From Blastocladiella emersonii ATCC 22665 (Eukaryota > Fungi > Blastocladiomycota): a stretch of DNA of 64,000 bases. Of the stretch, positions 20,509 through 64,000 are shown one piece after another. Each line of letters starts with the position of its first letter. Positions within the stretch are counted from its first letter, which is position 1. Where the stretch lies: the NCBI GenBank assembly GCA_025594325.1, contig JANHCV010000014.1:1178001-1242000 (forward strand), in the 5' to 3' direction. Made by a program: the position numbers and the translations under genes. The notes below the pieces were generated by a model that had not been told where the DNA came from, searched no databases, and saw only the letters and a list, made by a program, of their open reading frames with translations.

Positions 20509-21324
20509 ATGCCAGCCCCTGCTCCCGCGCCAGCCCCCGCGGCGCCGTCAGACTTGAAGATCATCCTGCTGGGCGATTCCGCCGTGGGCAAAAGCAAGCT
20601 CATGGAGCGATTTCTCGTCTCCGGCTACTCGCACGTCACGTCGTCGAGTACGGACCGCCAGTGACCTGGAGCGTGGGAGCCCGCCAGCGACGCGGCGCTG
20701 ACCATGCTGCACCCACTCGTAGCGTATGCGCTCAGTCTATTCAAGTACACGACAACGCATCCTGCAACGGGGAAGCCGCTCAACATCGACTTTTTCGACA
20801 CGGCCGGTCAGGAGCGGTTCGCCAGCATGCACGCGAGCTACTACCACGGTTCGTACACCCACCTCCCTCGCGCACGCTGAGACCCGATAAACTGACCCGA
20901 TTGCTTGGCTGTTACATCTAGGGGCCCACGCCTGCCTGCTCGTGTTCGACCTGATGCGGAAAGTGACGTACAAGAACCTCGAGAACTGGTACCACGAGCT
21001 CCGGCAATACCGCCCATCCATCCCCGTCATCATCCTCGCCAACAAGGTCGACGCGCAGCCCGAGATGGCCAAGCGCGACTTCAAGTTTGCCGTGGACAAC
21101 GGCCTCGACCTCAAGTTCGTCAGCGCAAGGTACGCCTTCCTTCCTTCTTGAGTTCGCTGCTCAAGCACGTCACTGACGCTGCGCTACGATACAATAGTGA
21201 CGGAACAAACGTCGTGGAAGCGTTCCAGGACATCATCCAGCGCGCGGTCGCGTACAAGGAGAGCGACCAGCGCGACTTCATGGACGACGTCCTGGAACTG
21301 ATCCGCGACGACGCGCCCCATTGA
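20509..21324 (+). CDS. RABL2: Rab-like GTPase RABL2 (ciliary), multi-exon
   Basis: KIILLGDSAVGKSKLMERFL, YALSLFKY, DFFDTAGQERFASMHASYYHGAHACLLVFD, RKVTYKNLENWYHELRQYRPSIPVIILANKVD: RABL2-type signature segments separated by introns. Confidence 0.93.
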
Positions 21325-21475
21325 GGGCAGCCGGAATATACCAACTTCTGCGACGTGCGCGCCTAGTTCCCAATTCAAGCCATGACATGGGTAACGGAGA
21401 AATCAAACGTTCATTGTGTAAATCGATAGCCCCGCTCAAGGACGTCCGCAACGTGGCTGCTCGACGCGCAAGCAC

Positions 21476-43300: not shown

Positions 43301-45668
43301 TGGAGGCCTTTTTGACTTCGCTTCCGCGAGCGGGGTGCCCTTCCATGGCCGCGTCGTCATGGCGCCCAACATAGTTTCCTCGGCCGCTGTGCTCCTGGTC
43401 AACCACGTTCTCACCGGCGACGATGGCGCCGTTGCGGCCTGCAGTGGGTGCGACTTTGTAACCCCGATCCCCGCTCGCTCGCCTTCCGGCAAGGAGTACA
43501 GCGGGGTCCCGCGCTTCATGCGGGGCCGGGGAAGGTGCTGGCACTACGCCAAGCTGGCGCCTGCTGCGGGTGCGCACCCAGTGGACGCCCGCGCCGACCT
43601 GGCCGCGCTTCGGCTGATCGACCTCTCGACGCTCTCTGATCCAGTGGAATTCGCGCGCCTCGCGCTTTCGCTTGAGCTTCCCGAGGACTTTGTGGGCGTC
43701 GGCTCGGGCGAGATATTCTCAGATGGCTCGCTCAAGGGCGCGGGCACCGAGGCCGTGGCTGCTGGTGCAGGCGTCTGCACGGTCGACCGCGAGGAGGACT
43801 TTGAGAGGAGCTTCGCAGTCCCTGCCAGCAACCACTCAAGTTTCCGGTCCGAGCTCTGGGGCGTCATCGCGGCTGCCTCGGTGGCCAGACGCGGGGCCTC
43901 GCTCACCATCACTTTGGACAACAAGGGTGTGGTCGACACTGCGGTCAAGATGCTTGCGCCCAGCGCGCGCGTCAAGATCCGCGCAACGTGCTCGCTGGAA
44001 TGGGCCGTGCTCCGTTGGATCGTGGAGGCGCGCAACCTCAAGATAGCTTTACAGTGGACGCGCGGGCACGTCGGCACCAAGGGCAACGAGGTGGCGGCCG
44101 GCCTGGCCAACGCAGGAACGCAGCCCGGCGTTGCCCCCCTCGCCATCAATCCAGCAATCCGCCGGCTCTTTGATGCGCCCTTCACGGTGATGTGGCGCGG
44201 CCAGGCCATCAACACGGACCCGCGGCGCTTTGCGCGCGGCCTCAACAACGCGCGGCACAGCGCCGTGCTGACAACCGTGACCGCGGCCAGCGTCACGCGC
44301 GCTCCCGTCGACATCCCCGCGACCGCGATCGCGCTGCGCGGCGGGCCCCGTCGCGTCCGCGGCAGCGAGTCCTTTTCGGCCAATGCTACCCTGAGCTTCC
44401 AGCTCAAGGCCCTCGCCGGCCAGCTGCCCACCCGCCATCGCTTGCACTCATGGTGGCCGCACCGCTACCCGTCCGAGGACTGCGTGGAGTGCTCGGCCCT
44501 CGGCCACTCCATCCCTGACACGCAGGCGCATTTCTTCGCGTGCCCAGCCTCGCTGGCCCGTGTGCCCGAGGCTGCGGAGGCGGCCTTCCCTTATGTCGCC
44601 GGCACTCTCAAAACAATCGACGACGACACGCACGCTGACCCCACGCTGCGCAGGGCCGCGCGCGAGATGGTCATGGAGCTTCTGCGCGACGGCCGCATCG
44701 AGCGCACCGCAGCAGGCCTGGTGGACTCGTCGCTCGTCGGCTGGTTCCGCAGATGCTACGGTCACATGCGGGGCTTCCCGTCCGCCCGGCTAGCACTCTC
44801 CGCTGCTGCGGCTGCCTGCTCGACCGCGATCCGCAAGGAAGTGTGGCTGCCCCGGTGCCAGGCGGTGGCCGAGGCCTCGCCAGTCGTGCACGGCCCGGCG
44901 TTGCCGCCGCCCGCCCGGCCTGATCCGTCGCCGCCGCGGCGGGCGCCCCTCACCCGCGCGAAGCGCGCGGCCGATGGCTACGCGCCGTGCTGCCTCGCCC
45001 CGCTCGCTGACCCTGACGATGGCTGCTGCGCCGCGGGAAACCCGCGGCGAAAGGCAGTGGCCCTCGCTGACGCAGCGGTGGCCCGCCGACACAACGGCGG
45101 AACCCTCGCTGCGCACCCGGCCCTCCGACCAGTATTCGGGATCCCCGTCAACGACGACGGCTCCCCGCCAACCGTCGGGCCGGCCCTGACCCTTTTTGAC
45201 CCCCTGCATGGCTCGTGGATCGACGCCCGCGTCGCCCCGCGACTCGGCGACTGGCAAGTCGCTGAGGACCCTGGCTTCCCGCCAGGGCCGCCGTAGCGCA
45301 TCCCTGCACCACCGGGCGCGTCTGGACTAGGCCTAGTCTAGCTCGCGCCTGGAGGGTGTGCGGCGACATGCGCTGAGCTGCGGAGCACGCTCACACGCTC
45401 CGCTACCGCCAGGTGGGTCGAGATTTGGGGCAGCCGGGTTGGAGGGTTCTCGGCCTCGGGCCGGTCTCCCTGCCAGCCTCCCTGCCTCCGCGCGCGCCCA
45501 GCCCCATAGGTTTTTCTCCTGTTGTGCTGCCGTTCGTGAGCTCTGTTTGGTGACTGTGTGGTGACGATGAGTTGTTTTTGTCTTTCCTTTGCATTTTTCC
45601 TCCTCTAGCACGTGAATACACCTGGGCGAATTTTCAAAAAAAAAAAAAAAACCTCCGGAAACGACTTC
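40363..45668. other. 17-bp (18 with the flanking A) target-site duplication CCTCCGGAAACGACTTC (40363-40379 and 45652-45668)
   Basis: Exact direct repeat; the second copy immediately follows the poly(A). Confidence 0.95.
40380..45651 (+). mobile_element. 5'-truncated LINE (family B): end of APE, RT, RNase H, CCHC zinc finger, 3' UTR and A16 tail
   Basis: Uninterrupted ORF to 45296. SRIDGVW...DHAPV (APE C-terminus only), LRPITLLE, EDKSKAYDSI, GLPQGGVECPLL, AFVDDL (RT), FSDGS/SELW/LDNK/GHVG.KGNE (RNase H), LPTRHRL...CVEC...H..C. Poly(A) at 45636-45651 and a TSD. Confidence 0.96.
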
Positions 45669-45896
45669 GCAATCCGGAACTTGCTCATCCATCGTATCCG
45701 ATTCCAACGTCATGTTCGCACCGTATACCATTCTTCGTCGCGACAAAGGCACGGAGGACGACCAAGACTTGAGAATTGACTCGCTGAACAGGCGTGAGCT
45801 AGACTAGGATTAGTCCAAACGCGCCCGGTGGTGCAGGGATGCGCTACGGCGGCCCCAGCGGGAAGCCAGGGTCCTCAGCGACTTGCACCTCGCCGA
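45244..45896. repeat. 108-bp inverted repeat pair (45244-45351 and 45789-45896), about 92% identical, each arm able to form multiple hairpins
   Basis: Manual alignment: 9 substitutions and no indels in 108 bp; flanks do not align. Confidence 0.92.
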
Positions 45897-46349
45897 CCCT
45901 CTTTCTCACCCAAAGTAGGGCCCTTGTGCAGCTCGTTGTACGATAGAGCCTTACCAGCTTCGTATCGACGATCAAGTTGTCCCAACCATCAACATCCGCG
46001 AGGCCTTTAGCGCAGGCCTTCAAGTCAAGCAAATTCCGAATCAGGTGGGCCAGCTGAGGACGGCGTCGGGTCATCCCGCGTTGGAGCAGGCGTGTGATTC
46101 CCGACAATTGGTGTTCGTCTGTCAGCGCGCGTCTAGCCTGGCGGAGCCTCTTCTATGCGGGCCGAGGCGCGCGCGATCGCGGTCGCGGTCGCCGCGGCAC
46201 CACCGCGCTCGCGGACCCACATCTACTCTGGCTCTCAGGCTGTCATTGCATCCGAGTCGGCCATCCGCGACCTATCGTTTCATTCCTCCTCTTCGTCTGA
46301 TTCTGGCTTTCCTTCTTCTCTCAGTTCTACCAACGCATGGTCGCTTGCA
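45669..46349 (-). mobile_element. Probable decayed 3' portion of an older related non-LTR element (minus strand), whose 3' UTR was the insertion target of family B
   Basis: ORF 45844-46107 ends RVGEVQVAEDPGFPLGPP*, versus RLGDWQVAEDPGFPPGPP* in family B, and shares the 108-bp block. The upstream frame has a stop. No tail or TSD identified. Confidence 0.45.
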
Positions 46350-46732
46350 GTGTGTGACGCCGGCGTGGCCGTTTGCGCCGTGTGCGCAGCGCGTGGTGCG
46401 TCGGGCGCTGTGCGGTGTGCGCGGTGCGCGGTGCGCGGTGTGCATCCGTCAGCGGGTGAGTGGTTTCACGCCGAGGGAGAGCGGAGCTGCTCGTAACCCT
46501 CCCTGGCCCATCATCACGCAGGACTTGGAGCTGACAGCAGAGCCGGCAGCAAGGAGGAGACCAGCCGTATATTGCCTGACGAACACCTCTCAGACCACCT
46601 ACGAGATAGATAAGAGCAACTGACTGGGAGCTGGCAGGCTGGCAGTCTGCCAGGCTGCCAGGGCTCATCATTCATTCCTTTGTTTGCAGGGACGGCAACC
46701 AGAGTGTGCGGGCCCACCATGGCTTGAGATGC

Positions 46733-46835
46733 GGCGTGGGTGGTTGGTTGGCTGGTTGGCTGGTTGGCTGGTTGGCTGGTTGGCTGGTTGGCTGGCAGGT
46801 TGGCTGGTTGGCTGGCAGGTTGGCAGGTCTGGCAG
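46733..46835 (+). repeat. (GGTTGGCT)n / GGCAGGTT G-rich 8-mer microsatellite in each array unit (first copy given)
   Basis: Direct reading; two 8-mers are missing in the second unit. Confidence 0.9.
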
Positions 46836-46992
46836 GTTGTCTTTTGGCTCGTTGATTGGACCGTTCGCTTTGCCGACGGGTTCAATAATTGGAGGAGGAT
46901 CGAAGAGTTGGATAGTGGAGTGTGCGCAAAGTGGTAGATTTGGACATCTGCCGGTCTGGGTGCTTGCCCACCTGGACGTGAGGGTATTCGAA

Positions 46993-47930
46993 GATCTGAA
47001 GATGGTTTGTTTGAGTACCATGACAATAATCAGCGTGGCGAGTTTGATACAACCGGAACATCAGATACTATGTTGTTGGTTCGATACTGTGATTTATAGG
47101 TCCTTGCCCACCAGATCATGGGGGGTGTGCGAAGATTTGAATATGGTTTTGTTTTGGTACTATGACGATTACCTACGTGGCTGGTTTACTATATTCCCAT
47201 GGTCAGATAATTCGTTACGTCGATATTACGATTTATTGGTCCCCAACCAGCTGGACATGCAGGAAGTCAAAGACTTGAACATGGTTTTGTTTGAGTGCTC
47301 TGACAATTATCTGCGTGGCTTGTTTATTATATTCCCATGTTCAGATATTTTGTTGAGTCGATATTACGATTTATGGGTGCCTGGCTAGCTGGTCATGCGG
47401 GTGGTCAAGGATTTGAATATGGTTTTGTTTGAGTACCATGACAATTGTCGGAGTGGCTCGTTTACAATATTGCTCTGCCCAGATTCATGGTTGCTTCGAT
47501 ACTGTAATTTATAGGAGCCAGGCTAGCTGGACATGCGGGAAGTCAAAGATGTGAGTACGGTTTTGTTTGAGTTCTCTGACAATTATCTGCGTGGCTTGTT
47601 TAGTATATTCCCATGTTCAGATATTTTGTTGAGTCGATATTACGATTTATGGGTCCCCAACGAGGTGGACATGCAGGAAGTCAACAACTTGAATATGGTT
47701 TTGTTTCGGTACTATGACAATTACGTACGTGGCTGGGTTACTATATTCCCATGGTCAGATATTTTGGTGGTTCGATACTGTGATTTATGGGTTCCTGGCT
47801 AGCTGGTCATGCGGGTGGTCAAGGATTTGAATATGGTTTTGTTTGAGTACCATGAGAATCATGTACGTGGCTGGTTTGGTACATCCCAAACATCGGCTAA
47901 TTTGTTTCGTGCATGTTGCGATTTGTGGGG
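46993..47930 (+). repeat. Seven diverged 138-bp AT-rich monomers in each unit (first unit given)
   Basis: Monomer starts at 46993, 47134, 47272, 47410, 47548, 47686 and 47824 (141 bp, then exact 138-bp spacing). Conserved ATGGTTTTGTTT and CGATA(T/C)T..GATTTA boxes. Monomer 5 hand count is 57/138 = 41% GC. Confidence 0.93.
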
Positions 47931-48344
47931 GGTCGGATTGGGCCGGACGTTGGCTGCAGCAAGGTCCCTCGGTCAAAATTCGACACAGTTGCTCCCCCTC
48001 CCTCTCTGTCATGCAGATAGTGGGTGGTGGCCGACCCATCCTGACCGCGCGCGGCCCGTATGAAGGTCCGCATCCACCCATCCATCCATCCATCCATTCA
48101 TTCAACACTCACTCCATCACGCACCTTTTCACTTGTGTTGTTTGCCAGCCAGCTAGACAGCTAGCCAGGTAGCCAGGTAGCCAGATCCTGCTGCTGCTAC
48201 CTACCTACCCTGCCTCCAACAACGCCCGCCGCGTCATGAGCCAGGCAGGGCCGTGCCGCGACAAATGGCCGCGGCAGGCGTGTACGGTAATTGTACCTGT
48301 ACCATACTTTCCATGGCCGCCCCGCCACCCTGACTTGGTCCTTG

Positions 48345-48411
48345 TATGTCACTTGGTCACCTTGGTCACCTTGGTCACTTGGTCACTTGGTCACTTGGTC
48401 ACTTGGTCACT
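48345..48411 (+). repeat. (TGGTCACT)n 8-mer microsatellite in each array unit (first copy given)
   Basis: Direct reading; two extra 8-mers near 58600 and 61180. Confidence 0.9.
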
Positions 48412-51400
48412 TTGCGCGTGTGATGGTGGACGAGTGAGTCCAGGCATGCACGCACAAAAGCCCGCACGCCCACGTGTACTCCTGCCAGGAGCGCCTGGTG
48501 TGGGTCATTCACCCACCATTCAGTTAGTAGTCCCTAGCACTCCTTGGCCTTGGTACTGTCTCCTGCAGGAGGAGCCCTGCCGCGTTAGCCCTCTGCAGCC
48601 CTCTGCAGCACTCTGCAGCACTCTGTCGCCGTACGGCCGCTGCCCTGTTTGCAACGTACGTTGGCCAGGGCGAGGCAGGTGCTGTGTTGTTGCTTGCCAC
48701 TTGGCTGCCACCAAGTGCAGGCGCACCCATCGCAAAGCGTTCTGATGGACCCCGCGGCCATGAAAGCATGGGGCAGCACTGGACATGAATGAATCAAGCA
48801 ATTGATGGCACTCGGAGGGCAGGCAGGCGCACCCGTTGGCGCAAGCAGACCTGGAGGATGGATCATTCTTGAGTTCAGGAAGCCTTGCCTGCCCGCCGTT
48901 CATGCGAGCGTGTGTGTGACACCAGCGTGGCCGTTTGCGCCGTGTGCGCAGCGCGTGGTGCGTCGGGCGCTGTGCGGTGTGCGCGGTGCGCGGTGCGCGG
49001 TGTGCATCCGTCAGCGGGTGAGTGGTTTCACGCCGAGGGAGAGCGGAGCTGCTCGTAACCCTCCCTGGCCCATCATCACGCAGGACTTGGAGCTGACAGC
49101 AGAGCCGGCAGCAAGGAGGAGACCAGCCGTATATTGCCTGACGAACACCTCTCAGACCACCTACGAGATAGATAAGAGCAACTGACTGGGAGCTGGCAGG
49201 CTGGCAGTCTGCCAGGCTGCCAGGGCTCATCATTCATTCCTTTGTTTGCAGGGACGGCAACCAGAGTGTGCGGGCCCACCATGGCTTGAGATGCGGCGTG
49301 GGTGGTTGGTTGGCTGGTTGGCTGGTTGGCTGGTTGGCTGGCAGGTTGGCTGGTTGGCTGGCAGGTTGGCAGGTCTGGCAGGTTGTCTTTTGGCTCGTTG
49401 ATTGGACCGTTCGCTTTGCCGACGGGTTCAATAATTGGAGGAGGATCGAAGAGTTGGATAGTGGAGTGTGCGCAAAGTGGTAGATTTGGACATCTGCCGG
49501 TCTGGGTGCTTGCCCACCTGGACGTGAGGGTATTCGAAGGTCTGAAGATGGTTTGTTTGAGTACCATGACAATAATCAGCGTGGCGAGTTTGATACAACC
49601 GGAACATCAGATACTATGTTGTTGGTTCGATACTGTGATTTATAGGTCCTTGCCCACCAGATCATGGGGGGTGTGCGAAGATTTGAATATGGTTTTGTTT
49701 TGGTACTATGACGATTACCTACGTGGCTGGTTTACTATATTCCCATGGTCAGATAATTTGTTACGTCGATATTACGATTTATTGGTCCCCAACCAGCTGG
49801 ACATGCAGGAAGTCAAAGACTTGAACATGGTTTTGTTTGAGTGCTCTGACAATCATCTGCGTGGCTTGTTTATTATATTCCCATGTTCAGATATTTTGTT
49901 GAGTCGATATTACGATTTATGGGTGCCTGGCTAGCTGGTCATGCGGGTGGTCAAGGATTTGAATATGGTTTTGTTTGAGTACCATGACAATTGTCGGAGT
50001 GGCTCGTTTACAATATTGCTCTGCCCAGATTCATGGTTGCTTCGATACTGTAATTTATAGGAGCCAGGCTAGCTGGACATGCGGGAAGTCAAAGATGTGA
50101 GTACGGTTTTGTTTGAGTTCTCTGACAATTATCTGCGTGGCTTGTTTAGTATATTCCCATGTTCAGATATTTTGTTGAGTCGATATTACGATTTATGGGT
50201 CCCCAACGAGGTGGACATGCAGGAAGTCAACAACTTGAATATGGTTTTGTTTCGGTACTATGACAATTACGTACGTGGCTGGGTTACTATATTCCCATGG
50301 TCAGATATTTTGGTGGTTCGATACTGTGATTTATGGGTTCCTGGCTAGCTGGTCATGCGGGTGGTCAAGGATTTGAATATGGTTTTGTTTGAGTACCATG
50401 AGAATCATGTACGTGGCTGGTTTGGTACATCCCAAACATCGGCTAATTTGTTTCGTGCATGTTGCGATTTGTGGGGGGTCGGATTGGGCCGGACGTTGGC
50501 TGCAGCAAGGTCCCTCGGTCAAAATTCGACACAGTTGCTCCCCCTCCCTCTCTGTCATGCAGATAGTGGGTGGTGGCCGACCCATCCTGACCGCGCGCGG
50601 CCCGTATGAAGGTCCGCATCCACCCATCCATCCATCCATCCATTCATTCAACACTCACTCCATCACGCACCTTTTCACTTGTGTTGTTTGCCAGCCAGCT
50701 AGACAGCTAGCCAGGTAGCCAGGTAGCCAGATCCTGCTGCTGCTACCTACCTACCCTGCCTCCAACAACGCCCGCCGCGTCATGAGCCAGGCAGGGCCGT
50801 GCCGCGACAAATGGCCGCGGCAGGCGTGTACGGTAATTGTACCTGTACCATACTTTCCATGGCCGCCCCGCCACCCTGACTTGGTCCTTGTATGTCACTT
50901 GGTCACCTTGGTCACCTTGGTCACTTGGTCACTTGGTCACTTGGTCACTTGGTCACTTTGCGCGTGTGATGGTGGACGAGTGAGTCCAGGCATGCACGCA
51001 CAAAAGCCCGCACGCCCACGTGTACTCCTGCCAGGAGCGCCTGGTGTGGGTCATTCACCCACCATTCAGTTAGTAGTCCCTAGCACTCCTTGGCCTTGGT
51101 ACTGTCTCCTGCAGGAGGAGCCCTGCCGCGTTAGCCCTCTGCAGCCCTCTGCAGCACTCTGCAGCACTCTGTCGCCGTACGGCCGCTGCCCTGTTTGCAA
51201 CGTACGTTGGCCAGGGCGAGGCAGGTGCTGTGTTGTTGCTTGCCACTTGGCTGCCACCAAGTGCAGGCGCACCCATCGCAAAGCGTTCTGATGGACCCCG
51301 CGGCCATGAAAGCATGGGGCAGCACTGGACATGAATGAATCAAGCAATTGATGGCACTCGGAGGGCAGGCAGGCGCACCCGTTGGCGCAAGCAGACCTGG

Positions 51401-54400
51401 AGGATGGATCATTCTTGAGTTCAGGAAGCCTTGCCTGCCCGCCGTTCATGCGAGCGTGTGTGTGACACCAGCGTGGCCGTTTGCGCCGTGTGCGCAGCGC
51501 GTGGTGCGTCGGGCGCTGTGCGGTGTGCGCGGTGCGCGGTGCGCGGTGTGCATCCGTCAGCGGGTGAGTGGTTTCACGCCGAGGGAGAGCGGAGCTGCTC
51601 GTAACCCTCCCTGGCCCATCATCACGCAGGACTTGGAGCTGACAGCAGAGCCGGCAGCAAGGAGGAGACCAGCCGTATATTGCCTGACGAACACCTCTCA
51701 GACCACCTACGAGATAGATAAGAGCAACTGACTGGGAGCTGGCAGGCTGGCAGTCTGCCAGGCTGCCAGGGCTCATCATTCATTCCTTTGTTTGCAGGGA
51801 CGGCAACCAGAGTGTGCGGGCCCACCATGGCTTGAGATGCGGCGTGGGTGGTTGGTTGGCTGGTTGGCTGGTTGGCTGGTTGGCTGGTTGGCTGGTTGGC
51901 TGGCAGGTTGGCTGGTTGGCTGGCAGGTTGGCAGGTCTGGCAGGTTGTCTTTTGGCTCGTTGATTGGACCGTTCGCTTTGCCGACGGGTTCAATAATTGG
52001 AGGAGGATCGAAGAGTTGGATAGTGGAGTGTGCGCAAAGTGGTAGATTTGGACATCTGCCGGTCTGGGTGCTTGCCCACCTGGACGTGAGGGTATTCGAA
52101 GGTCTGAAGATGGTTTGTTTGAGTACCATGACAATAATCAGCGTGGCGAGTTTGATACAACCGGAACATCAGATACTATGTTGTTGGTTCGATACTGTGA
52201 TTTATAGGTCCTTGCCCACCAGATCATGGGGGGTGTGCGAAGATTTGAATATGGTTTTGTTTTGGTACTATGACGATTACCTACGTGGCTGGTTTACTAT
52301 ATTCCCATGGTCAGATAATTTGTTACGTCGATATTACGATTTATTGGTCCCCAACCAGCTGGACATGCAGGAAGTCAAAGACTTGAACATGGTTTTGTTT
52401 GAGTGCTCTGACAATTATCTGCGTGGCTTGTTTATTATATTCCCATGTTCAGATATTTTGTTGAGTCGATATTACGATTTATGGGTGCCTGGCTAGCTGG
52501 TCATGCGGGTGGTCAAGGATTTGAATATGGTTTTGTTTGAGTACCATGACAATTGTCGGAGTGGCTCGTTTACAATATTGCTCTGCCCAGATTCATGGTT
52601 GCTTCGATACTGTAATTTATAGGAGCCAGGCTAGCTGGACATGCGGGAAGTCAAAGATGTGAGTACGGTTTTGTTTGAGTTCTCTGACAATTATCTGCGT
52701 GGCTTGTTTAGTATATTCCCATGTTCAGATATTTTGTTGAGTCGATATTACGATTTATGGGTCCCCAACGAGGTGGACATGCAGGAAGTCAACAACTTGA
52801 ATATGGTTTTGTTTGGGTACTATGACAATTACGTACGTGGCTGGGTTACTATATTCCCATGGTCAGATACTTTGGTGGTTCGATACTGTGATTTATGGGT
52901 TCCTGGCTAGCTGGTCATGCGGGTGGTCAAGGATTTGAATATGGTTTTGTTTGAGTACCATGAGAATCATGTACGTGGCTGGTTTGGTACATCCCAAACA
53001 TCGGCTAATTTGTTTCGTGCATGTTGCGATTTGTGGGGGGTCGGATTGGGCCGGACGTTGGCTGCAGCAAGGTCCCTCGGTCAAAATTCGACACAGTTGC
53101 TCCCCCTCCCTCTCTGTCATGCAGATAGTGGGTGGTGGCCGACCCATCCTGACCGCGCGCGGCCCGTATGAAGGTCCGCATCCACCCATCCATCCATCCA
53201 TCCATTCATTCAACACTCACTCCATCACGCACCTTTTCACTTGTGTTGTTTGCCAGCCAGCTAGACAGCTAGCCAGGTAGCCAGGTAGCCAGATCCTGCT
53301 GCTGCTACCTACCTACCCTGCCTCCAACAACGCCCGCCGCGTCATGAGCCAGGCAGGGCCGTGCCGCGACAAATGGCCGCGGCAGGCGTGTACGGTAATT
53401 GTACCTGTACCATACTTTCCATGGCCGCCCCGCCACCCTGACTTGGTCCTTGTATGTCACTTGGTCACCTTGGTCACCTTGGTCACTTGGTCACTTGGTC
53501 ACTTGGTCACTTGGTCACTTTGCGCGTGTGATGGTGGACGAGTGAGTCCAGGCATGCACGCACAAAAGCCCGCACGCCCACGTGTACTCCTGCCAGGAGC
53601 GCCTGGTGTGGGTCATTCACCCACCATTCAGTTAGTAGTCCCTAGCACTCCTTGGCCTTGGTACTGTCTCCTGCAGGAGGAGCCCTGCCGCGTTAGCCCT
53701 CTGCAGCCCTCTGCAGCACTCTGCAGCACTCTGTCGCCGTACGGCCGCTGCCCTGTTTGCAACGTACGTTGGCCAGGGCGAGGCAGGTGCTGTGTTGTTG
53801 CTTGCCACTTGGCTGCCACCAAGTGCAGGCGCACCCATCGCAAAGCGTTCTGATGGACCCCGCGGCCATGAAAGCATGGGGCAGCACTGGACATGAATGA
53901 ATCAAGCAATTGATGGCACTCGGAGGGCAGGCAGGCGCACCCGTTGGCGCAAGCAGACCTGGAGGATGGATCATTCTTGAGTTCAGGAAGCCTTGCCTGC
54001 CCGCCGTTCATGCGAGCGTGTGTGTGACACCAGCGTGGCCGTTTGCGCCGTGTGCGCAGCGCGTGGTGCGTCGGGCGCTGTGCGGTGTGCGCGGTGCGCG
54101 GTGCGCGGTGTGCATCCGTCAGCGGGTGAGTGGTTTCACGCCGAGGGAGAGCGGAGCTGCTCGTAACCCTCCCTGGCCCATCATCACGCAGGACTTGGAG
54201 CTGACAGCAGAGCCGGCAGCAAGGAGGAGACCAGCCGTATATTGCCTGACGAACACCTCTCAGACCACCTACGAGATAGATAAGAGCAACTGACTGGGAG
54301 CTGGCAGGCTGGCAGTCTGCCAGGCTGCCAGGGCTCATCATTCATTCCTTTGTTTGCAGGGACGGCAACCAGAGTGTGCGGGCCCACCATGGCTTGAGAT

Positions 54401-57400
54401 GCGGCGTGGGTGGTTGGTTGGCTGGTTGGCTGGTTGGCTGGTTGGCTGGTTGGCTGGTTGGCTGGCAGGTTGGCTGGTTGGCTGGCAGGTTGGCAGGTCT
54501 GGCAGGTTGTCTTTTGGCTCGTTGATTGGACCGTTCGCTTTGCCGACGGGTTCAATAATTGGAGGAGGATCGAAGAGTTGGATAGTGGAGTGTGCGCAAA
54601 GTGGTAGATTTGGACATCTGCCGGTCTGGGTGCTTGCCCACCTGGACGTGAGGGTATTCGAAGGTCTGAAGATGGTTTGTTTGAGTACCATGACAATAAT
54701 CAGCGTGGCGAGTTTGATACAACCGGAACATCAGATACTATGTTGTTGGTTCGATACTGTGATTTATAGGTCCTTGCCCACCAGATCATGGGGGGTGTGC
54801 GAAGATTTGAATATGGTTTTGTTTTGGTACTATGACGATTACCTACGTGGCTGGTTTACTATATTCCCATGGTCAGATAATTTGTTACGTCGATATTACG
54901 ATTTATTGGTCCCCAACCAGCTGGACATGCAGGAAGTCAAAGACTTGAACATGGTTTTGTTTGAGTGCTCTGACAATTATCTGCGTGGCTTGTTTATTAT
55001 ATTCCCATGTTCAGATATTTTGTTGAGTCGATATTACGATTTATGGGTGCCTGGCTAGCTGGTCATGCGGGTGGTCAAGGATTTGAATATGGTTTTGTTT
55101 GAGTACCATGACAATTGTCGGAGTGGCTCGTTTACAATATTGCTCTGCCCAGATTCATGGTTGCTTCGATACTGTAATTTATAGGAGCCAGGCTAGCTGG
55201 ACATGCGGGAAGTCAAAGATGTGAGTACGGTTTTGTTTGAGTTCTCTGACAATTATCTGCGTGGCTTGTTTAGTATATTCCCATGTTCAGATATTTTGTT
55301 GAGTCGATATTACGATTTATGGGTCCCCAACGAGGTGGACATGCAGGAAGTCAACAACTTGAATATGGTTTTGTTTGGGTACTATGACAATTACGTACGT
55401 GGCTGGGTTACTATATTCCCATGGTCAGATATTTTGGTGGTTCGATACTGTGATTTATGGGTTCCTGGCTAGCTGGTCATGCGGGTGGTCAAGGATTTGA
55501 ATATGGTTTTGTTTGAGTACCATGAGAATCATGTACGTGGCTGGTTTGGTACATCCCAAACATCGGCTAATTTGTTTCGTGCATGTTGCGATTTGTGGGG
55601 GGTCGGATTGGGCCGGACGTTGGCTGCAGCAAGGTCCCTCGGTCAAAATTCGACACAGTTGCTCCCCCTCCCTCTCTGTCATGCAGATAGTGGGTGGTGG
55701 CCGACCCATCCTGACCGCGCGCGGCCCGTATGAAGGTCCGCATCCACCCATCCATCCATCCATCCATTCATTCAACACTCACTCCATCACGCACCTTTTC
55801 ACTTGTGTTGTTTGCCAGCCAGCTAGACAGCTAGCCAGGTAGCCAGGTAGCCAGATCCTGCTGCTGCTACCTACCTACCCTGCCTCCAACAACGCCCGCC
55901 GCGTCATGAGCCAGGCAGGGCCGTGCCGCGACAAATGGCCGCGGCAGGCGTGTACGGTAATTGTACCTGTACCATACTTTCCATGGCCGCCCCGCCACCC
56001 TGACTTGGTCCTTGTATGTCACTTGGTCACCTTGGTCACCTTGGTCACTTGGTCACTTGGTCACTTGGTCACTTGGTCACTTTGCGCGTGTGATGGTGGA
56101 CGAGTGAGTCCAGGCATGCACGCACAAAAGCCCGCACGCCCACGTGTACTCCTGCCAGGAGCGCCTGGTGTGGGTCATTCACCCACCATTCAGTTAGTAG
56201 TCCCTAGCACTCCTTGGCCTTGGTACTGTCTCCTGCAGGAGGAGCCCTGCCGCGTTAGCCCTCTGCAGCCCTCTGCAGCACTCTGCAGCACTCTGTCGCC
56301 GTACGGCCGCTGCCCTGTTTGCAACGTACGTTGGCCAGGGCGAGGCAGGTGCTGTGTTGTTGCTTGCCACTTGGCTGCCACCAAGTGCAGGCGCACCCAT
56401 CGCAAAGCGTTCTGATGGACCCCGCGGCCATGAAAGCATGGGGCAGCACTGGACATGAATGAATCAAGCAATTGATGGCACTCGGAGGGCAGGCAGGCGC
56501 ACCCGTTGGCGCAAGCAGACCTGGAGGATGGATCATTCTTGAGTTCAGGAAGCCTTGCCTGCCCGCCGTTCATGCGAGCGTGTGTGTGACACCAGCGTGG
56601 CCGTTTGCGCCGTGTGCGCAGCGCGTGGTGCGTCGGGCGCTGTGCGGTGTGCGCGGTGCGCGGTGCGCGGTGTGCATCCGTCAGCGGGTGAGTGGTTTCA
56701 CGCCGAGGGAGAGCGGAGCTGCTCGTAACCCTCCCTGGCCCATCATCACGCAGGACTTGGAGCTGACAGCAGAGCCGGCAGCAAGGAGGAGACCAGCCGT
56801 ATATTGCCTGACGAACACCTCTCAGACCACCTACGAGATAGATAAGAGCAACTGACTGGGAGCTGGCAGGCTGGCAGTCTGCCAGGCTGCCAGGGCTCAT
56901 CATTCATTCCTTTGTTTGCAGGGACGGCAACCAGAGTGTGCGGGCCCACCATGGCTTGAGATGCGGCGTGGGTGGTTGGTTGGCTGGTTGGCTGGTTGGC
57001 TGGTTGGCTGGTTGGCTGGTTGGCTGGCAGGTTGGCTGGTTGGCTGGCAGGTTGGCAGGTCTGGCAGGTTGTCTTTTGGCTCGTTGATTGGACCGTTCGC
57101 TTTGCCGACGGGTTCAATAATTGGAGGAGGATCGAAGAGTTGGATAGTGGAGTGTGCGCAAAGTGGTAGATTTGGACATCTGCCGGTCTGGGTGCTTGCC
57201 CACCTGGACGTGAGGGTATTCGAAGGTCTGAAGATGGTTTGTTTGAGTACCATGACAATAATCAGCGTGGCGAGTTTGATACAACCGGAACATCAGATAC
57301 TATGTTGTTGGTTCGATACTGTGATTTATAGGTCCTTGCCCACCAGATCATGGGGGGTGTGCGAAGATTTGAATATGGTTTTGTTTTGGTACTATGACGA

Positions 57401-60400
57401 TTACCTACGTGGCTGGTTTACTATATTCCCATGGTCAGATAATTTGTTACGTCGATATTACGATTTATTGGTCCCCAACCAGCTGGACATGCAGGAAGTC
57501 AAAGACTTGAACATGGTTTTGTTTGAGTGCTCTGACAATTATCTGCGTGGCTTGTTTATTATATTCCCATGTTCAGATATTTTGTTGAGTCGATATTACG
57601 ATTTATGGGTGCCTGGCTAGCTGGTCATGCGGGTGGTCAAGGATTTGAATATGGTTTTGTTTGAGTACCATGACAATTGTCGGAGTGGCTCGTTTACAAT
57701 ATTGCTCTGCCCAGATTCATGGTTGCTTCGATACTGTAATTTATAGGAGCCAGGCTAGCTGGACATGCGGGAAGTCAAAGATGTGAGTACGGTTTTGTTT
57801 GAGTTCTCTGACAATTATCTGCGTGGCTTGTTTAGTATATTCCCATGTTCAGATATTTTGTTGAGTCGATATTACGATTTATGGGTCCCCAACGAGGTGG
57901 ACATGCAGGAAGTCAACAACTTGAATATGGTTTTGTTTGGGTACTATGACAATTACGTACGTGGCTGGGTTACTATATTCCCATGGTCAGATATTTTGGT
58001 GGTTCGATACTGTGATTTATGGGTTCCTGGCTAGCTGGTCATGCGGGTGGTCAAGGATTTGAATATGGTTTTGTTTGAGTACCATGAGAATCATGTACGT
58101 GGCTGGTTTGGTACATCCCAAACATCGGCTAATTTGTTTCGTGCATGTTGCGATTTGTGGGGGGTCGGATTGGGCCGGACGTTGGCTGCAGCAAGGTCCC
58201 TCGGTCAAAATTCGACACAGTTGCTCCCCCTCCCTCTCTGTCATGCAGATAGTGGGTGGTGGCCGACCCATCCTGACCGCGCGCGGCCCGTATGAAGGTC
58301 CGCATCCACCCATCCATCCATCCATCCATTCATTCAACACTCACTCCATCACGCACCTTTTCACTTGTGTTGTTTGCCAGCCAGCTAGACAGCTAGCCAG
58401 GTAGCCAGGTAGCCAGATCCTGCTGCTGCTACCTACCTACCCTGCCTCCAACAACGCCCGCCGCGTCATGAGCCAGGCAGGGCCGTGCCGCGACAAATGG
58501 CCGCGGCAGGCGTGTACGGTAATTGTACCTGTACCATACTTTCCATGGCCGCCCCGCCACCCTGACTTGGTCCTTGTATGTCACTTGGTCACCTTGGTCA
58601 CCTTAGTCACTTGGTCACTTGGTCACTTGGTCACTTGGTCACTTGGTCACTTGGTCACTTTGCGCGTGTGATGGTGGACGAGTGAGTCCAGGCATGCACG
58701 CACAAAAGCCCGCACGCCCACGTGTACTCCTGCCAGGAGCGCCTGGTGTGGGTCATTCACCCACCATTCAGTTAGTAGTCCCTAGCACTCCTTGGCCTTG
58801 GTACTGTCTCCTGCAGGAGGAGCCCTGCCGCGTTAGCCCTCTGCAGCCCTCTGCAGCACTCTGCAGCACTCTGTCGCCGTACGGCCGCTGCCCTGTTTGC
58901 AACGTACGTTGGCCAGGGCGAGGCAGGTGCTGTGTTGTTGCTTGCCACTTGGCTGCCACCAAGTGCAGGCGCACCCATCGCAAAGCGTTCTGATGGACCC
59001 CGCGGCCATGAAAGCATGGGGCAGCACTGGACATGAATGAATCAAGCAATTGATGGCACTCGGAGGGCAGGCAGGCGCACCCGTTGGCGCAAGCAGACCT
59101 GGAGGATGGATCATTCTTGAGTTCAGGAAGCCTTGCCTGCCCGCCGTTCATGCGAGCGTGTGTGTGACACCAGCGTGGCCGTTTGCGCCGTGTGCGCAGC
59201 GCGTGGTGCGTCGGGCGCTGTGCGGTGTGCGCGGTGCGCGGTGCGCGGTGTGCATCCGTCAGCGGGTGAGTGGTTTCACGCCGAGGGAGAGCGGAGCTGC
59301 TCGTAACCCTCCCTGGCCCATCATCACGCAGGACTTGGAGCTGACAGCAGAGCCGGCAGCAAGGAGGAGACCAGCCGTATATTGCCTGACGAACACCTCT
59401 CAGACCACCTACGAGATAGATAAGAGCAACTGACTGGGAGCTGGCAGGCTGGCAGTCTGCCAGGCTGCCAGGGCTCATCATTCATTCCTTTGTTTGCAGG
59501 GACGGCAACCAGAGTGTGCGGGCCCACCATGGCTTGAGATGCGGCGTGGGTGGTTGGTTGGCTGGTTGGCTGGTTGGCTGGTTGGCTGGTTGGCTGGTTG
59601 GCTGGCAGGTTGGCTGGTTGGCTGGCAGGTTGGCAGGTCTGGCAGGTTGTCTTTTGGCTCGTTGATTGGACCGTTCGCTTTGCCGACGGGTTCAATAATT
59701 GGAGGAGGATCGAAGAGTTGGATAGTGGAGTGTGCGCAAAGTGGTAGATTTGGACATCTGCCGGTCTGGGTGCTTGCCCACCTGGACGTGAGGGTATTCG
59801 AAGGTCTGAAGATGGTTTGTTTGAGTACCATGACAATAATCAGCGTGGCGAGTTTGATACAACCGGAACATCAGATACTATGTTGTTGGTTCGATACTGT
59901 GATTTATAGGTCCTTGCCCACCAGATCATGGGGGGTGTGCGAAGATTTGAATATGGTTTTGTTTTGGTACTATGACGATTACCTACGTGGCTGGTTTACT
60001 ATATTCCCATGGTCAGATAATTTGTTACGTCGATATTACGATTTATTGGTCCCCAACCAGCTGGACATGCAGGAAGTCAAAGACTTGAACATGGTTTTGT
60101 TTGAGTGCTCTGACAATTATCTGCGTGGCTTGTTTATTATATTCCCATGTTCAGATATTTTGTTGAGTCGATATTACGATTTATGGGTGCCTGGCTAGCT
60201 GGTCATGCGGGTGGTCAAGGATTTGAATATGGTTTTGTTTGAGTACCATGACAATTGTCGGAGTGGCTCGTTTACAATATTGCTCTGCCCAGATTCATGG
60301 TTGCTTCGATACTGTAATTTATAGGAGCCAGGCTAGCTGGACATGCGGGAAGTCAAAGATGTGAGTACGGTTTTGTTTGAGTTCTCTGACAATTATCTGC

Positions 60401-63400
60401 GTGGCTTGTTTAGTATATTCCCATGTTCAGATATTTTGTTGAGTCGATATTACGATTTATGGGTCCCCAACGAGGTGGACATGCAGGAAGTCAACAACTT
60501 GAATATGGTTTTGTTTGGGTACTATGACAATTACGTACGTGGCTGGGTTACTATATTCCCATGGTCAGATATTTTGGTGGTTCGATACTGTGATTTATGG
60601 GTTCCTGGCTAGCTGGTCATGCGGGTGGTCAAGGATTTGAATATGGTTTTGTTTGAGTACCATGAGAATCATGTACGTGGCTGGTTTGGTACATCCCAAA
60701 CATCGGCTAATTTGTTTCGTGCATGTTGCGATTTGTGGGGGGTCGGATTGGGCCGGACGTTGGCTGCAGCAAGGTCCCTCGGTCAAAATTCGACACAGTT
60801 GCTCCCCCTCCCTCTCTGTCATGCAGATAGTGGGTGGTGGCCGACCCATCCTGACCGCGCGCGGCCCGTATGAAGGTCCGCATCCACCCATCCATCCATC
60901 CATCCATTCATTCAACACTCACTCCATCACGCACCTTTTCACTTGTGTTGTTTGCCAGCCAGCTAGACAGCTAGCCAGGTAGCCAGGTAGCCAGATCCTG
61001 CTGCTGCTACCTACCTACCCTGCCTCCAACAACGCCCGCCGCGTCATGAGCCAGGCAGGGCCGTGCCGCGACAAATGGCCGCGGCAGGCGTGTACGGTAA
61101 TTGTACCTGTACCATACTTTCCATGGCCGCCCCGCCACCCTGACTTGGTCCTTGTATGTCACTTGGTCACCTTGGTCACCTTAGTCACTTGGTCACTTGG
61201 TCACTTGGTCACTTGGTCACTTGGTCACTTGGTCACTTTGCGCGTGTGATGGTGGACGAGTGAGTCCAGGCATGCACGCACAAAAGCCCGCACGCCCACG
61301 TGTACTCCTGCCAGGAGCGCCTGGTGTGGGTCATTCACCCACCATTCAGTTAGTAGTCCCTAGCACTCCTTGGCCTTGGTACTGTCTCCTGCAGGAGGAG
61401 CCCTGCCGCGTTAGCCCTCTGCAGCCCTCTGCAGCACTCTGCAGCACTCTGTCGCCGTACGGCCGCTGCCCTGTTTGCAACGTACGTTGGCCAGGGCGAG
61501 GCAGGTGCTGTGTTGTTGCTTGCCACTTGGCTGCCACCAAGTGCAGGCGCACCCATCGCAAAGCGTTCTGATGGACCCCGCGGCCATGAAAGCATGGGGC
61601 AGCACTGGACATGAATGAATCAAGCAATTGATGGCACTCGGAGGGCAGGCAGGCGCACCCGTTGGCGCAAGCAGACCTGGAGGATGGATCATTCTTGAGT
61701 TCAGGAAGCCTTGCCTGCCCGCCGTTCATGCGAGCGTGTGTGTGACACCAGCGTGGCCGTTTGCGCCGTGTGCGCAGCGCGTGGTGCGTCGGGCGCTGTG
61801 CGGTGTGCGCGGTGCGCGGTGCGCGGTGTGCATCCGTCAGCGGGTGAGTGGTTTCACGCCGAGGGAGAGCGGAGCTGCTCGTAACCCTCCCTGGCCCATC
61901 ATCACGCAGGACTTGGAGCTGACAGCAGAGCCGGCAGCAAGGAGGAGACCAGCCGTATATTGCCTGACGAACACCTCTCAGACCACCTACGAGATAGATA
62001 AGAGCAACTGACTGGGAGCTGGCAGGCTGGCAGTCTGCCAGGCTGCCAGGGCTCATCATTCATTCCTTTGTTTGCAGGGACGGCAACCAGAGTGTGCGGG
62101 CCCACCATGGCTTGAGATGCGGCGTGGGTGGTTGGTTGGCTGGTTGGCTGGTTGGCTGGTTGGCTGGTTGGCTGGTTGGCTGGCAGGTTGGCTGGTTGGC
62201 TGGCAGGTTGGCAGGTCTGGCAGGTTGTCTTTTGGCTCGTTGATTGGACCGTTCGCTTTGCCGACGGGTTCAATAATTGGAGGAGGATCGAAGAGTTGGA
62301 TAGTGGAGTGTGCGCAAAGTGGTAGATTTGGACATCTGCCGGTCTGGGTGCTTGCCCACCTGGACGTGAGGGTATTCGAAGGTCTGAAGATGGTTTGTTT
62401 GAGTACCATGACAATAATCAGCGTGGCGAGTTTGATACAACCGGAACATCAGATACTATGTTGTTGGTTCGATACTGTGATTTATAGGTCCTTGCCCACC
62501 AGATCATGGGGGGTGTGCGAAGATTTGAATATGGTTTTGTTTTGGTACTATGACGATTACCTACGTGGCTGGTTTACTATATTCCCATGGTCAGATAATT
62601 TGTTACGTCGATATTACGATTTATTGGTCCCCAACCAGCTGGACATGCAGGAAGTCAAAGACTTGAACATGGTTTTGTTTGAGTGCTCTGACAATTATCT
62701 GCGTGGCTTGTTTATTATATTCCCATGTTCAGATATTTTGTTGAGTCGATATTACGATTTATGGGTGCCTGGCTAGCTGGTCATGCGGGTGGTCAAGGAT
62801 TTGAATATGGTTTTGTTTGAGTACCATGACAATTGTCGGAGTGGCTCGTTTACAATATTGCTCTGCCCAGATTCATGGTTGCTTCGATACTGTAATTTAT
62901 AGGAGCCAGGCTAGCTGGACATGCGGGAAGTCAAAGATGTGAGTACGGTTTTGTTTGAGTTCTCTGACAATTATCTGCGTGGCTTGTTTAGTATATTCCC
63001 ATGTTCAGATATTTTGTTGAGTCGATATTACGATTTATGGGTCCCCAACGAGGTGGACATGCAGGAAGTCAACAACTTGAATATGGTTTTGTTTGGGTAC
63101 TATGACAATTACGTACGTGGCTGGGTTACTATATTCCCATGGTCAGATATTTTGGTGGTTCGATACTGTGATTTATGGGTTCCTGGCTAGCTGGTCATGC
63201 GGGTGGTCAAGGATTTGAATATGGTTTTGTTTGAGTACCATGAGAATCATGTACGTGGCTGGTTTGGTACATCCCAAACATCGGCTAATTTGTTTCGTGC
63301 ATGTTGCGATTTGTGGGGGGTCGGATTGGGCCGGACGTTGGCTGCAGCAAGGTCCCTCGGTCAAAATTCGACACAGTTGCTCCCCCTCCCTCTCTGTCAT

Positions 63401-64000
63401 GCAGATAGTGGGTGGTGGCCGACCCATCCTGACCGCGCGCGGCCCGTATGAAGGTCCGCATCCACCCATCCATCCATCCATCCATTCATTCAACACTCAC
63501 TCCATCACGCACCTTTTCACTTGTGTTGTTTGCCAGCCAGCTAGACAGCTAGCCAGGTAGCCAGGTAGCCAGATCCTGCTGCTGCTACCTACCTACCCTG
63601 CCTCCAACAACGCCCGCCGCGTCATGAGCCAGGCAGGGCCGTGCCGCGACAAATGGCCGCGGCAGGCGTGTACGGTAATTGTACCTGTACCATACTTTCC
63701 ATGGCCGCCCCGCCACCCTGACTTGGTCCTTGTATGTCACTTGGTCACCTTGGTCACCTTGGTCACTTGGTCACTTGGTCACTTGGTCACTTGGTCACTT
63801 TGCGCGTGTGATGGTGGACGAGTGAGTCCAGGCATGCACGCACAAAAGCCCGCACGCCCACGTGTACTCCTGCCAGGAGCGCCTGGTGTGGGTCATTCAC
63901 CCACCATTCAGTTAGTAGTCCCTAGCACTCCTTGGCCTTGGTACTGTCTCCTGCAGGAGGAGCCCTGCCGCGTTAGCCCTCTGCAGCCCTCTGCAGCACT

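What the first reader, a model, noticed from the sequence alone, without database searches (positions are those of the whole stretch)
46350..64000. Uncharacterised 2.56-kb higher-order tandem array: candidate satellite centromere or subtelomere in an early-diverging fungus
Seen: about 6.9 near-identical head-to-tail units with no rRNA, tRNA, snRNA, transposase, poly(A) or terminal repeat recognised. Each unit combines an AT-rich block of seven 138-bp monomers with a GC-rich spacer of microsatellites ((GGTTGGCT)n, (CCAT)n, (AGCCAGGT)n, (TGGTCACT)n, (CTGCAGCA..)n, (CGCGGTG)n). Diverged monomers inside homogeneous multimers is the organisation of primate alpha-satellite HORs, which I do not know to be described for zoosporic fungi. 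Alternatives (inference): a subtelomeric block, an amplified non-autonomous rolling-circle element, or a tandem ncRNA locus.
Basis: partly seen in the sequence, partly recalled or inferred. Interest (0 to 1): 0.75.

Follow-up and report, generated by a model that had tools for sequence, protein, structure and literature searches.

The report
Candidate satellite centromere, water fungus
A real, non-coding 2.56-kb repeat array lies well inside a chromosome of the water fungus Blastocladiella emersonii; it is one of seven chromosome-specific arrays that are the best candidates for repeat-based centromeres, a type not reported in fungi, but no experiment shows this yet.

Summary
From window 46350 the sequence is a head-to-tail array of 2546-2578-bp units, 99.7-100% identical. 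Each unit has seven diverged 138-bp AT-rich monomers plus a GC-rich spacer full of microsatellites. The array runs to the end of contig C6 (11.9 units). Its only other copies are four units at the end of contig C21, in the orientation expected for a join. So it most likely sits 1.2 Mb and 1.7 Mb from the far ends of its two contigs, not under a telomere.

The genome (very probably Blastocladiella emersonii ATCC 22665) holds seven such arrays, about 0.98 Mb in all. Each has its own unit variant, each breaks the assembly, and no contig carries two. One LINE family sits at nearly every array edge. The units show no coding signature, no Rfam match and almost no copies outside the arrays.

Best reading (about 0.55): satellite-type centromeres, which reviews say fungi lack. 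Main rival: a non-centromeric macrosatellite. The subtelomere and transposon readings are not supported.

This scan had already reached the same reading on other arrays of this genome. I re-derived the map independently, and it adds the C6-C21 pair.

The parts
46350..64000 (+). Tandem array C, 6.9 units in the window. Unit starts: 46350, 48912, 51458, 54020, 56582, 59160, 61738. It continues to the end of contig C6 (11.9 units, 30.5 kb).
46989..47958 (+). Monomer block of unit 1: seven 138-bp AT-rich monomers, 60-88% identical to each other. The same block recurs in every unit.
46382..46440 (+). (GTGCGCG)n microsatellite at the unit start. The first 150 bp of the unit are 81-89% conserved between arrays.
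46631..46677 (+). Near-perfect dyad made of inverted CTGGCAGG-type octamers, followed by a 31-nt single-copy stretch. This is the best-conserved non-microsatellite part of the unit (94% across seven arrays). I used it as a one-per-unit marker.
46737..46854 (+). (TGGTTGGC)n microsatellite; copy number varies between units (12.8 or 14.8 copies).
48078..48097 (+). (CCAT)5 microsatellite.
48147..48184 (+). (AGCCAGCT/AGCCAGGT)n microsatellite.
48348..48412 (+). (GTCACTTG)n microsatellite; 7.9 or 9.9 copies depending on the unit.
48587..48625 (+). (AGCACTCTGC)n minisatellite.
45789..46349 (+). 561-bp piece that abuts the array's left edge. Its right 300-460 bp (45889-46349) are 75-88% identical to sequence that, at other array edges, lies just 5' of the terminal 1.7 kb of LINE-B.
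40380..45650 (+). LINE-A: a 5.3-kb non-LTR retrotransposon insertion. It has a reverse-transcriptase domain (ORF 40248-45296), a poly(A) end and an 18-bp target-site duplication (40362-40379 = 45651-45668). It is absent from the duplicate flank on C21, so it inserted later.
37253..38997 (-). LINE-B: the terminal 1.7 kb of a second LINE family, with its poly(A) end at 37253. Copies 91-97% identical lie at nearly every array edge in the genome.
37255..40379 (+). Left copy of a 3.25-kb direct repeat (with 45669-45788) that brackets the array. The right copy, 98% identical, abuts the array's other edge at C21:1,732,047.

Best explanation
The array is one of seven chromosome-specific satellite arrays that mark, and probably are, the centromeres of Blastocladiella emersonii.

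Shown:
- A 2.56-kb non-coding composite unit (seven 138-bp AT-rich monomers plus a GC-rich spacer rich in microsatellites) is repeated head to tail and kept near-identical within the array.
- Neighbouring units share variants.
- The seven arrays differ by 3-23%.
- One LINE family is concentrated at array edges.

Inferred:
- The C6 and C21 pieces are the two halves of one internal array.
- Unequal exchange and gene conversion within each chromosome homogenise the array.
- CENP-A/CENP-C chromatin assembles on part of it, most likely on the monomer blocks.
- LINE-B inserts preferentially into array chromatin. Its copies survive only at the edges, or become part of the unit as in arrays D and E.
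For: Array and pairing
- The array is real and homogeneous.
- A 32-mer specific to this variant occurs only in C6 (12 times, + strand, at the contig end) and C21 (4 times, - strand, at the contig end). The C21 period is 2574 bp, the same as the last C6 units.

Genome map
- One-per-unit markers give 221 + 96 in-array hits, in seven arrays:
  - A: C2 end + C5 start
  - B: C7 end + C4 start
  - C: C6 end + C21 end
  - D: C11 end + C10 end
  - E: C17 end
  - F: C20 end + C19 start
  - G: C9 end + C16 start
- In all six pairs the strands fit a head-to-tail join.
- No contig has two arrays.

Distance from chromosome ends
- Telomere repeats (TTTAGG)n occur only at the C2 and C11 starts, 1.68 and 2.81 Mb from arrays A and D.

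Unit evolution
- Units are 99.9% identical within an array and 77-97% between arrays. The first and last monomers are orthologous across arrays, so the composite unit predates the split.
- No coding signature: no third-position excess, no conserved ORFs, indels mostly not multiples of three.
- No Pfam match reaches its family cut-off. No Rfam match.

LINE-B at the edges
- Copies 91-97% identical lie within 0-3 kb of 11 of 13 mapped edges and about 6 kb from a 12th (array G on C9). Only two such copies lie elsewhere.
- The poly(A) end touches, or lies 75 bp from (C16), the array at the three edges checked at base level.

Kinetochore and literature
- A CENP-C cupin gene is present.
- Pericentromere-specific LINEs and scaffolds that end in centromeres are known from Mucor.
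Against: - There is no CENP-A, kinetochore, Hi-C or cytological data.
- No array is spanned by a single contig, so the internal position rests on pairing contig ends.
- Array E has no partner contig.
- Five large contigs (C1, C3, C8, C15, C18; 11.9 Mb) carry neither markers nor high-identity LINE-B copies, and their ends are unresolved. 'One per chromosome' is therefore compatible with the data but unproven.
- Genes lie within 4-10 kb of the array on both sides, so there is no pericentric gene desert.
- The monomers show no excess dyad symmetry.
- 60% of the unit is GC-rich spacer, unlike classical centromeric satellites.
- A survey of 49 fungi found no satellite centromeres.
Confidence: 0.55

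Rival explanations
1. Non-centromeric macrosatellite family: chromosome-specific blocks of a selfishly amplified or heterochromatin-forming repeat (like D4Z4/DXZ4-type macrosatellites or knobs). They are kept homogeneous by unequal exchange but are not the site of kinetochore assembly. The centromeres lie elsewhere and are inconspicuous.
For: The unit size (2.5-4.1 kb) and GC-rich, microsatellite-laden spacer resemble macrosatellites more than classical 100-400-bp centromeric satellites. Genes lie right next to the array. 11.9 Mb of contigs have no array. Fungi surveyed so far lack satellite centromeres.
Against: Seven arrays of one family, never two on a contig or contig pair, and none anywhere else, is the centromere pattern. 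Knobs and macrosatellites are usually present on only some chromosomes or several times per chromosome. The edge-specific LINE family parallels centromere-associated retroelements.
Confidence: 0.3
2. Subtelomeric satellite: the array ends the chromosome under an unassembled telomere.
For: The array runs to the end of contig C6. The assembly has few telomeres.
Against: No (TTTAGG)n lies in or after the array. The same variant ends exactly one other contig, in the opposite orientation relative to the contig end, as do the other five pairs. The two assembled telomeres carry none of the family's markers nearby and lie 1.7-2.8 Mb from arrays on the same contigs.
Confidence: 0.03
3. Amplified mobile element (Helitron or other rolling-circle element) or integrated extrachromosomal repeat circle with no chromosomal function.
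For: The array is bracketed by a 3.25-kb direct repeat at 98% identity. Integration of a circle by homologous recombination would produce this.
Against: No Rep, helicase or transposase ORF is present. There are no single units with target-site duplications elsewhere: 317 of 318 marker hits lie in the seven arrays, and the one exception (C9:158,851, 1 mismatch, opposite strand) lies just outside array G and was not examined. The unit architecture is shared by all arrays and diverged in place.
Confidence: 0.05
4. Tandem array of a non-coding RNA gene or a hidden spliced protein gene, one per unit.
For: One short stretch per unit is 94% conserved.
Against: No Rfam match even at E<=1. No Pfam match reaches its family cut-off. 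ORFs open in this array are broken by stops and frameshifts in the other six. No 3-periodicity of substitutions in any of 33 windows, and indels are mostly not multiples of three. Conservation is flat along the unit.
Confidence: 0.05

Closest known systems
[quoted passage not shown]
   Same: Diverged near-nucleosome-length AT-rich monomers (here 138 bp, 60-88% identical) sit inside multimeric units that are about 99.9% identical within an array. Variants are chromosome-specific with graded relatedness between chromosomes. Neighbouring units are locally homogenised. Retroelements sit at the edges.
   Different: Only about 38% of the unit is monomers; the rest is a 1.6-kb GC-rich spacer of microsatellites and unique sequence. 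Arrays are 41-283 kb, not megabases. No CENP-B-box equivalent is known. Centromere function is not shown.
Mucor circinelloides mosaic centromeres with pericentric Grem-LINE1 (bioRxiv 10.1101/706580)
   Same: It is also an early-diverging fungus. A LINE family is confined to the neighbourhood of the (candidate) centromeres, and scaffolds break there.
   Different: Mucor cores are about 200-bp AT-rich sequence plus a motif inside 15-75-kb gene-free regions, with no tandem satellite. Mucor lacks CENP-A, whereas this genome has a CENP-C cupin gene. Here genes lie within 4-10 kb of the array.
Human macrosatellites (D4Z4, DXZ4)
   Same: Kilobase-size (about 3 kb) GC-rich units in chromosome-specific tandem arrays of tens to about 100 copies.
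   Different: Those occur at one or two loci, not once on each of many chromosomes. They lack an internal AT-rich monomer block. D4Z4 carries an ORF. This comparison rests on my own knowledge, not on a tool result.
Drosophila centromeres: retroelement islands (G2/Jockey-3) within satellite arrays (PMC6516634, listed)
   Same: A non-LTR retroelement is associated with satellite arrays at (candidate) centromeres.
   Different: In Drosophila the retroelement islands are the CENP-A core and the satellites are simple. Here LINE copies sit at array edges or as fragments fixed inside the unit (arrays D and E).

Membership tests
Satellite (tandem-repeat) centromere | Long homogeneous tandem array of non-coding units | tested here: met
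   11.9 + 4 units at 99.7-100% identity, with no coding signal
Satellite (tandem-repeat) centromere | Exactly one array per chromosome, at an internal position | tested here: inconclusive
   There are seven arrays, never two on a contig or contig pair. Internal position is inferred from the six pairs. Array E has no partner, and 11.9 Mb of contigs without arrays are unplaced.
Satellite (tandem-repeat) centromere | Occupied by CENP-A/CENH3 and kinetochore proteins | not testable with these tools
   No chromatin data are available. Only the presence of a CENP-C cupin gene was shown.
Alpha-satellite-type higher-order repeat | Unit composed entirely of an integer number of diverged monomers | tested here: not met
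   Seven monomers make up about 970 bp of a 2562-bp unit; the rest is unrelated GC-rich spacer.
Alpha-satellite-type higher-order repeat | Monomers much more diverged than the multimeric units; chromosome-specific multimers | tested here: met
   Monomers average 72% identity against 99.9% for units. There are seven array-specific variants.
Subtelomeric satellite | Adjacent to telomere repeats, with the same orientation relative to chromosome ends | tested here: not met
   No (TTTAGG)n lies next to any array. Paired ends have opposite orientation relative to the contig end in six of six pairs.
Helitron or other transposon-derived tandem amplification | Dispersed copies with defined termini or target-site duplications, and an element-encoded protein somewhere in the family | tested here: not met
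   317 of 318 marker hits lie inside the seven arrays; the exception (C9:158,851, 1 mismatch) lies just outside array G and was not examined. No ORF has a significant family match.
rDNA intergenic-spacer-derived satellite | Sequence similarity of the unit to the species' own rDNA spacer | not tested
   rDNA (17.4-kb unit) was located at the C17 start, but its spacer could not be fetched. The 150 bp at the C17 start do not match the units.
Tandem RNA gene array (5S, snRNA, SL RNA and the like) | Match to a known RNA family in each unit | tested here: not met
   No Rfam match at the gathering score or at E<=1 on two units; no tRNA

The most novel reading that the evidence does not exclude
These arrays are the functional centromeres of B. 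emersonii. That would be the first tandem-satellite, higher-order-repeat-like centromeres in the fungal kingdom, with chromosome-specific composite units and a LINE family that targets or is retained at their edges. It would imply that satellite centromeres were present, or could arise, early in fungal evolution and were lost or replaced in the Dikarya and Mucoromycota.
Probability: 0.55. Interest if true: 0.85.

Novelty: new variant of a known kind. Interest (0 to 1): 0.7.

Why it matters
Centromeres of zoosporic fungi have not been mapped in any paper I could find. The B. emersonii genome paper does not mention centromeres or satellites.

A 2026 atlas of 325 eukaryotes, including 49 fungi but no chytrids or blastoclads, states that it saw no satellite architectures in fungi. 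It suggests fungi may be unable to make or keep satellite arrays. A second paper makes the same point for higher-order repeats.

Seven homogenised, chromosome-specific arrays in a blastoclad show at least that fungi can build and maintain such arrays. If the arrays bind CENP-A, the 'fungi have no satellite centromeres' generalisation falls. It would also give a small-genome, culturable model for satellite centromere evolution, homogenisation and retroelement targeting. One ChIP or CUT&RUN experiment would settle it.

Tried and rejected
- (TTAGGG)4 as the telomere: absent. The real motif, TTTAGG, was read from contig starts.
- Whole-unit DNA search of the genome: returned only arrays D on C10 and C11, because only the best candidates are scored. 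I replaced it with one-per-unit pattern markers.
- C4 as the partner of C6: rejected, only 78% identity.
- Coding monomers: the 138-bp consensus is open in one frame, but real monomers carry about 0.9 stops each and show no third-position excess. Unit ORFs are not conserved in other arrays. The only Pfam hits are below cut-off, to a low-complexity repeat and a DUF.
- Dyad-symmetry (non-B DNA) enrichment in monomers: none, z from -0.8 to +2.2.
- Known RNA families: none.
- Monomer k-mer in public metagenome contigs: no hit.
- rDNA-spacer origin: rDNA was located, but the spacer could not be fetched, so this is untested.
- Species check through the rhodopsin-guanylyl cyclase against the PDB: not done, for the same reason. 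Species identity rests on matching assembly statistics and the telomere motif.
Full report
**Observation**

Tandem Repeats Finder shows the same set of short repeats recurring every ~2.56 kb from about 46.35 kb to the window end. These are a 138-bp repeat of 5.4 well-matched copies and five micro/minisatellites. Self-BLAST defines units of 2562, 2546, 2562, 2562, 2578 and 2578 bp, plus a cut unit. The array starts exactly at 46350, where homology to the unit junctions begins.

The window is C6:1,178,001-1,242,000 of a 32.65-Mb, 21-contig assembly. C6 is 1,254,856 bp. With the rest of the contig, the array has 11 full units plus 2273 bp and ends at the contig end without a telomere.

- Units are 99.7-100% identical by substitutions.
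- Units 9-12 share three variants (a 4-bp deletion and two substitutions) that units 2-8 lack, so neighbouring units are more alike.
- Each unit holds seven monomers, 60-88% identical to each other.
- GC is 43.5% in the monomer block, 60.2% in the rest of the unit and 62.8% in the flank.

One correction: the unit is composite, not made of monomers alone.

**Which organism**

Contig lengths give 21 contigs, N50 2.02 Mb and L50 6. The telomere repeat is CCTAAA/TTTAGG. The published Blastocladiella emersonii ATCC 22665 assembly has the same contig number, N50, L50 and telomere motif. That paper never mentions centromeres or satellites. Earlier notes of this scan name the same species. I could not make a direct sequence check.

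**Position in the genome**

A 32-mer specific to this variant occurs 12 times on C6 (+ strand, contig end) and 4 times on C21 (- strand, last 10 kb), and nowhere else.

- C21 is 1,742,282 bp, and its array runs from 1,732,048 to the contig end.
- The C21 period is 2574 bp, the same as the last full C6 units.
- The two pieces have opposite strands at two contig ends, as expected if the assembler broke one array.

On that reading the array (at least 41 kb) lies between 1.22 Mb of C6 and 1.73 Mb of C21.

**Genome-wide map**

Two one-per-unit markers give 221 hits. A marker for a seventh variant gives 96 in-array hits, plus one 1-mismatch hit on the opposite strand just outside array G.

| Array | Contig ends | Unit size | Units |
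|---|---|---|---|
| A | C2 end + C5 start | 3124 bp | 85 |
| B | C7 end + C4 start | 2766-2790 bp | 43 |
| C (this one) | C6 end + C21 end | 2546-2578 bp | 16 |
| D | C11 end + C10 end | ~3.3 kb | 25 |
| E | C17 end, no partner | ~4.1 kb | 36 |
| F | C20 end + C19 start | 2.6-3.05 kb | 15 |
| G | C9 from ~161-167 kb to its end + C16:1-358 | 2.2-3.6 kb | 96 |

- Together the arrays cover about 0.98 Mb, 3% of the assembly. This is a minimum, because every array breaks a contig.
- In all six pairs the strands fit a head-to-tail join, the opposite of what symmetric chromosome ends would show.
- Telomere repeats are assembled only at the C2 and C11 starts, 1.68 and 2.81 Mb from arrays A and D on the same contigs.
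- No contig has two arrays.
- C1, C3, C8, C15 and C18 (11.9 Mb) have none, and their ends are unresolved. 'One per chromosome' is arithmetically possible: six array scaffolds each have one open end. It is not shown.

**Unit evolution**

- Aligned units from the seven arrays are 75-85% conserved against this one, evenly along the unit. The peaks are a 31-nt stretch next to a dyad (94%) and one microsatellite.
- This array is the most divergent member: 79-84% in the spacer and 77-80% in the monomers. D, E and F are 92-97% alike.
- The first and last monomers match the first and last monomers of other arrays better than their own neighbours. The composite unit therefore predates the arrays.
- Nothing suggests coding:
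  - about 0.9 stops per monomer in the best frame, with no third-position excess;
  - ORFs of this array are broken in the others;
  - no 3-periodicity in 33 windows, and indels are mostly not multiples of three;
  - no Pfam match reaches its family cut-off.
- No Rfam match even at E<=1.
- Monomers show no excess dyad symmetry.

**Edges**

Left of the array lies a LINE pile-up.

- LINE-A (40380-45650) has a reverse-transcriptase domain, a poly(A) end and an 18-bp target-site duplication.
- LINE-B (37253-38997, antisense) is the terminal 1.7 kb of a second family.
- LINE-B copies 91-97% identical lie within 0-3 kb of 11 of 13 mapped array edges, about 6 kb from a 12th (array G on C9), and at only two other places.
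- By coordinates, its poly(A) end faces the array at 11 edges. At base level it touches the array at the C21 and C11 edges and lies 75 bp from it at C16, at different unit positions. The association is therefore not with one target sequence.
- Fragments of LINE-B are fixed inside every unit of arrays D and E.
- On the C21 side an M16 peptidase gene lies within 4 kb of the array. On the C6 side ordinary genes reach to within ~10 kb.

The array is bracketed by a 3.25-kb direct repeat at 98% identity: LINE-B, half of an LRR-like ORF, and ~400 bp. I could not resolve how that arose.

**Interpretation**

The following features together match the pattern of satellite centromeres in animals and plants:

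- one family of long, homogenised, chromosome-specific, non-coding arrays;
- internal position, inferred from the contig pairing;
- never two arrays per contig pair;
- AT-rich near-nucleosome-length monomers;
- an edge-associated LINE family.

A LINE confined to centromere neighbourhoods, and scaffolds that end there, are known from Mucor. A CENP-C cupin gene is present.

Against this reading:

- There are no chromatin data.
- Placement of contigs is incomplete.
- There is no gene-poor pericentromere.
- The unit is unusually large and mostly GC-rich.

I put the centromere reading at about 0.55 and a non-centromeric macrosatellite at about 0.3. The subtelomere, transposon and RNA-gene readings are low.

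**Novelty**

- No paper in the library links Blastocladiomycota or chytrids with mapped centromeres.
- A 2026 atlas says it saw no satellite architectures in fungi.
- A 2026 methods paper says fungal regional centromeres lack canonical higher-order repeat arrays.
- This scan had already reported sister arrays of the same genome with the same reading. I treated those notes as leads and rebuilt the map, the pairing and the LINE association from my own searches.
- What this report adds: the C6-C21 pair, its exact edges, and its position as the most divergent family member.

Noticed in passing
window 37255-40379 and 45669-45788; C21:1,728,818-1,732,047 (L055): The array is bracketed by a 3.25-kb direct repeat at 98% identity: the LINE-B tail, the second half of an LRR-like ORF, and about 400 bp. 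On the C6 side the same LINE-B tail interrupts the LRR-like ORF instead of touching the array. The origin is unresolved; it could be circle integration, unequal exchange or a LINE-mediated rearrangement.
   Followed up: partly
window 40380-45650: LINE-A is a clean later insertion with a poly(A) end and an 18-bp target-site duplication. It has a 1682-aa open frame that starts in flanking DNA (40248).
   Followed up: partly
G000 C17:3405-6978 and 20769-24342: Two LSU rRNA genes lie 17,364 bp apart at the start of C17: an rDNA array with an unusually long unit, on the same contig as array E but 2 Mb away.
   Followed up: no
Contig ends: C4 end, C15 end, C16 end, C20 start (type X); C21 start, C5 end, C3 end (type Y): Several contigs stop at the same nucleotide of a shared sequence, in the same orientation relative to the end. 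These are likely subterminal sequences or a repeated element at which assembly stopped.
   Followed up: no
G000 C2:1-870, C11:1-95, C11:558,145: The telomere repeat is (TTTAGG)n and is assembled at only two contig ends. One near-match lies inside C11.
   Followed up: partly
G000 C16:633,010-633,261: A CENP-C cupin domain (PF11699, 80.6 bits) lies in a 1644-aa open frame. It is a ready target for centromere mapping.
   Followed up: no
G000 C9:~161,000-443,892: Array G has 96 units whose lengths range from 2.2 to 3.6 kb. That is far less uniform than the other arrays, and its units lack the two markers shared by the other six.
   Followed up: partly
G000 C17:2,062,000-2,209,773 and C10/C11 arrays: Every unit of array E (4.1 kb) and array D (3.3 kb) contains a LINE-B-derived fragment (72-80% identical to the window's copy) that was amplified with the unit.
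   Followed up: partly
C10 start, C13 both ends, C18 start: These contig ends are CTG/CAG runs, so the assembly also breaks at trinucleotide repeats. C10 may continue into C13 or C18.
   Followed up: no
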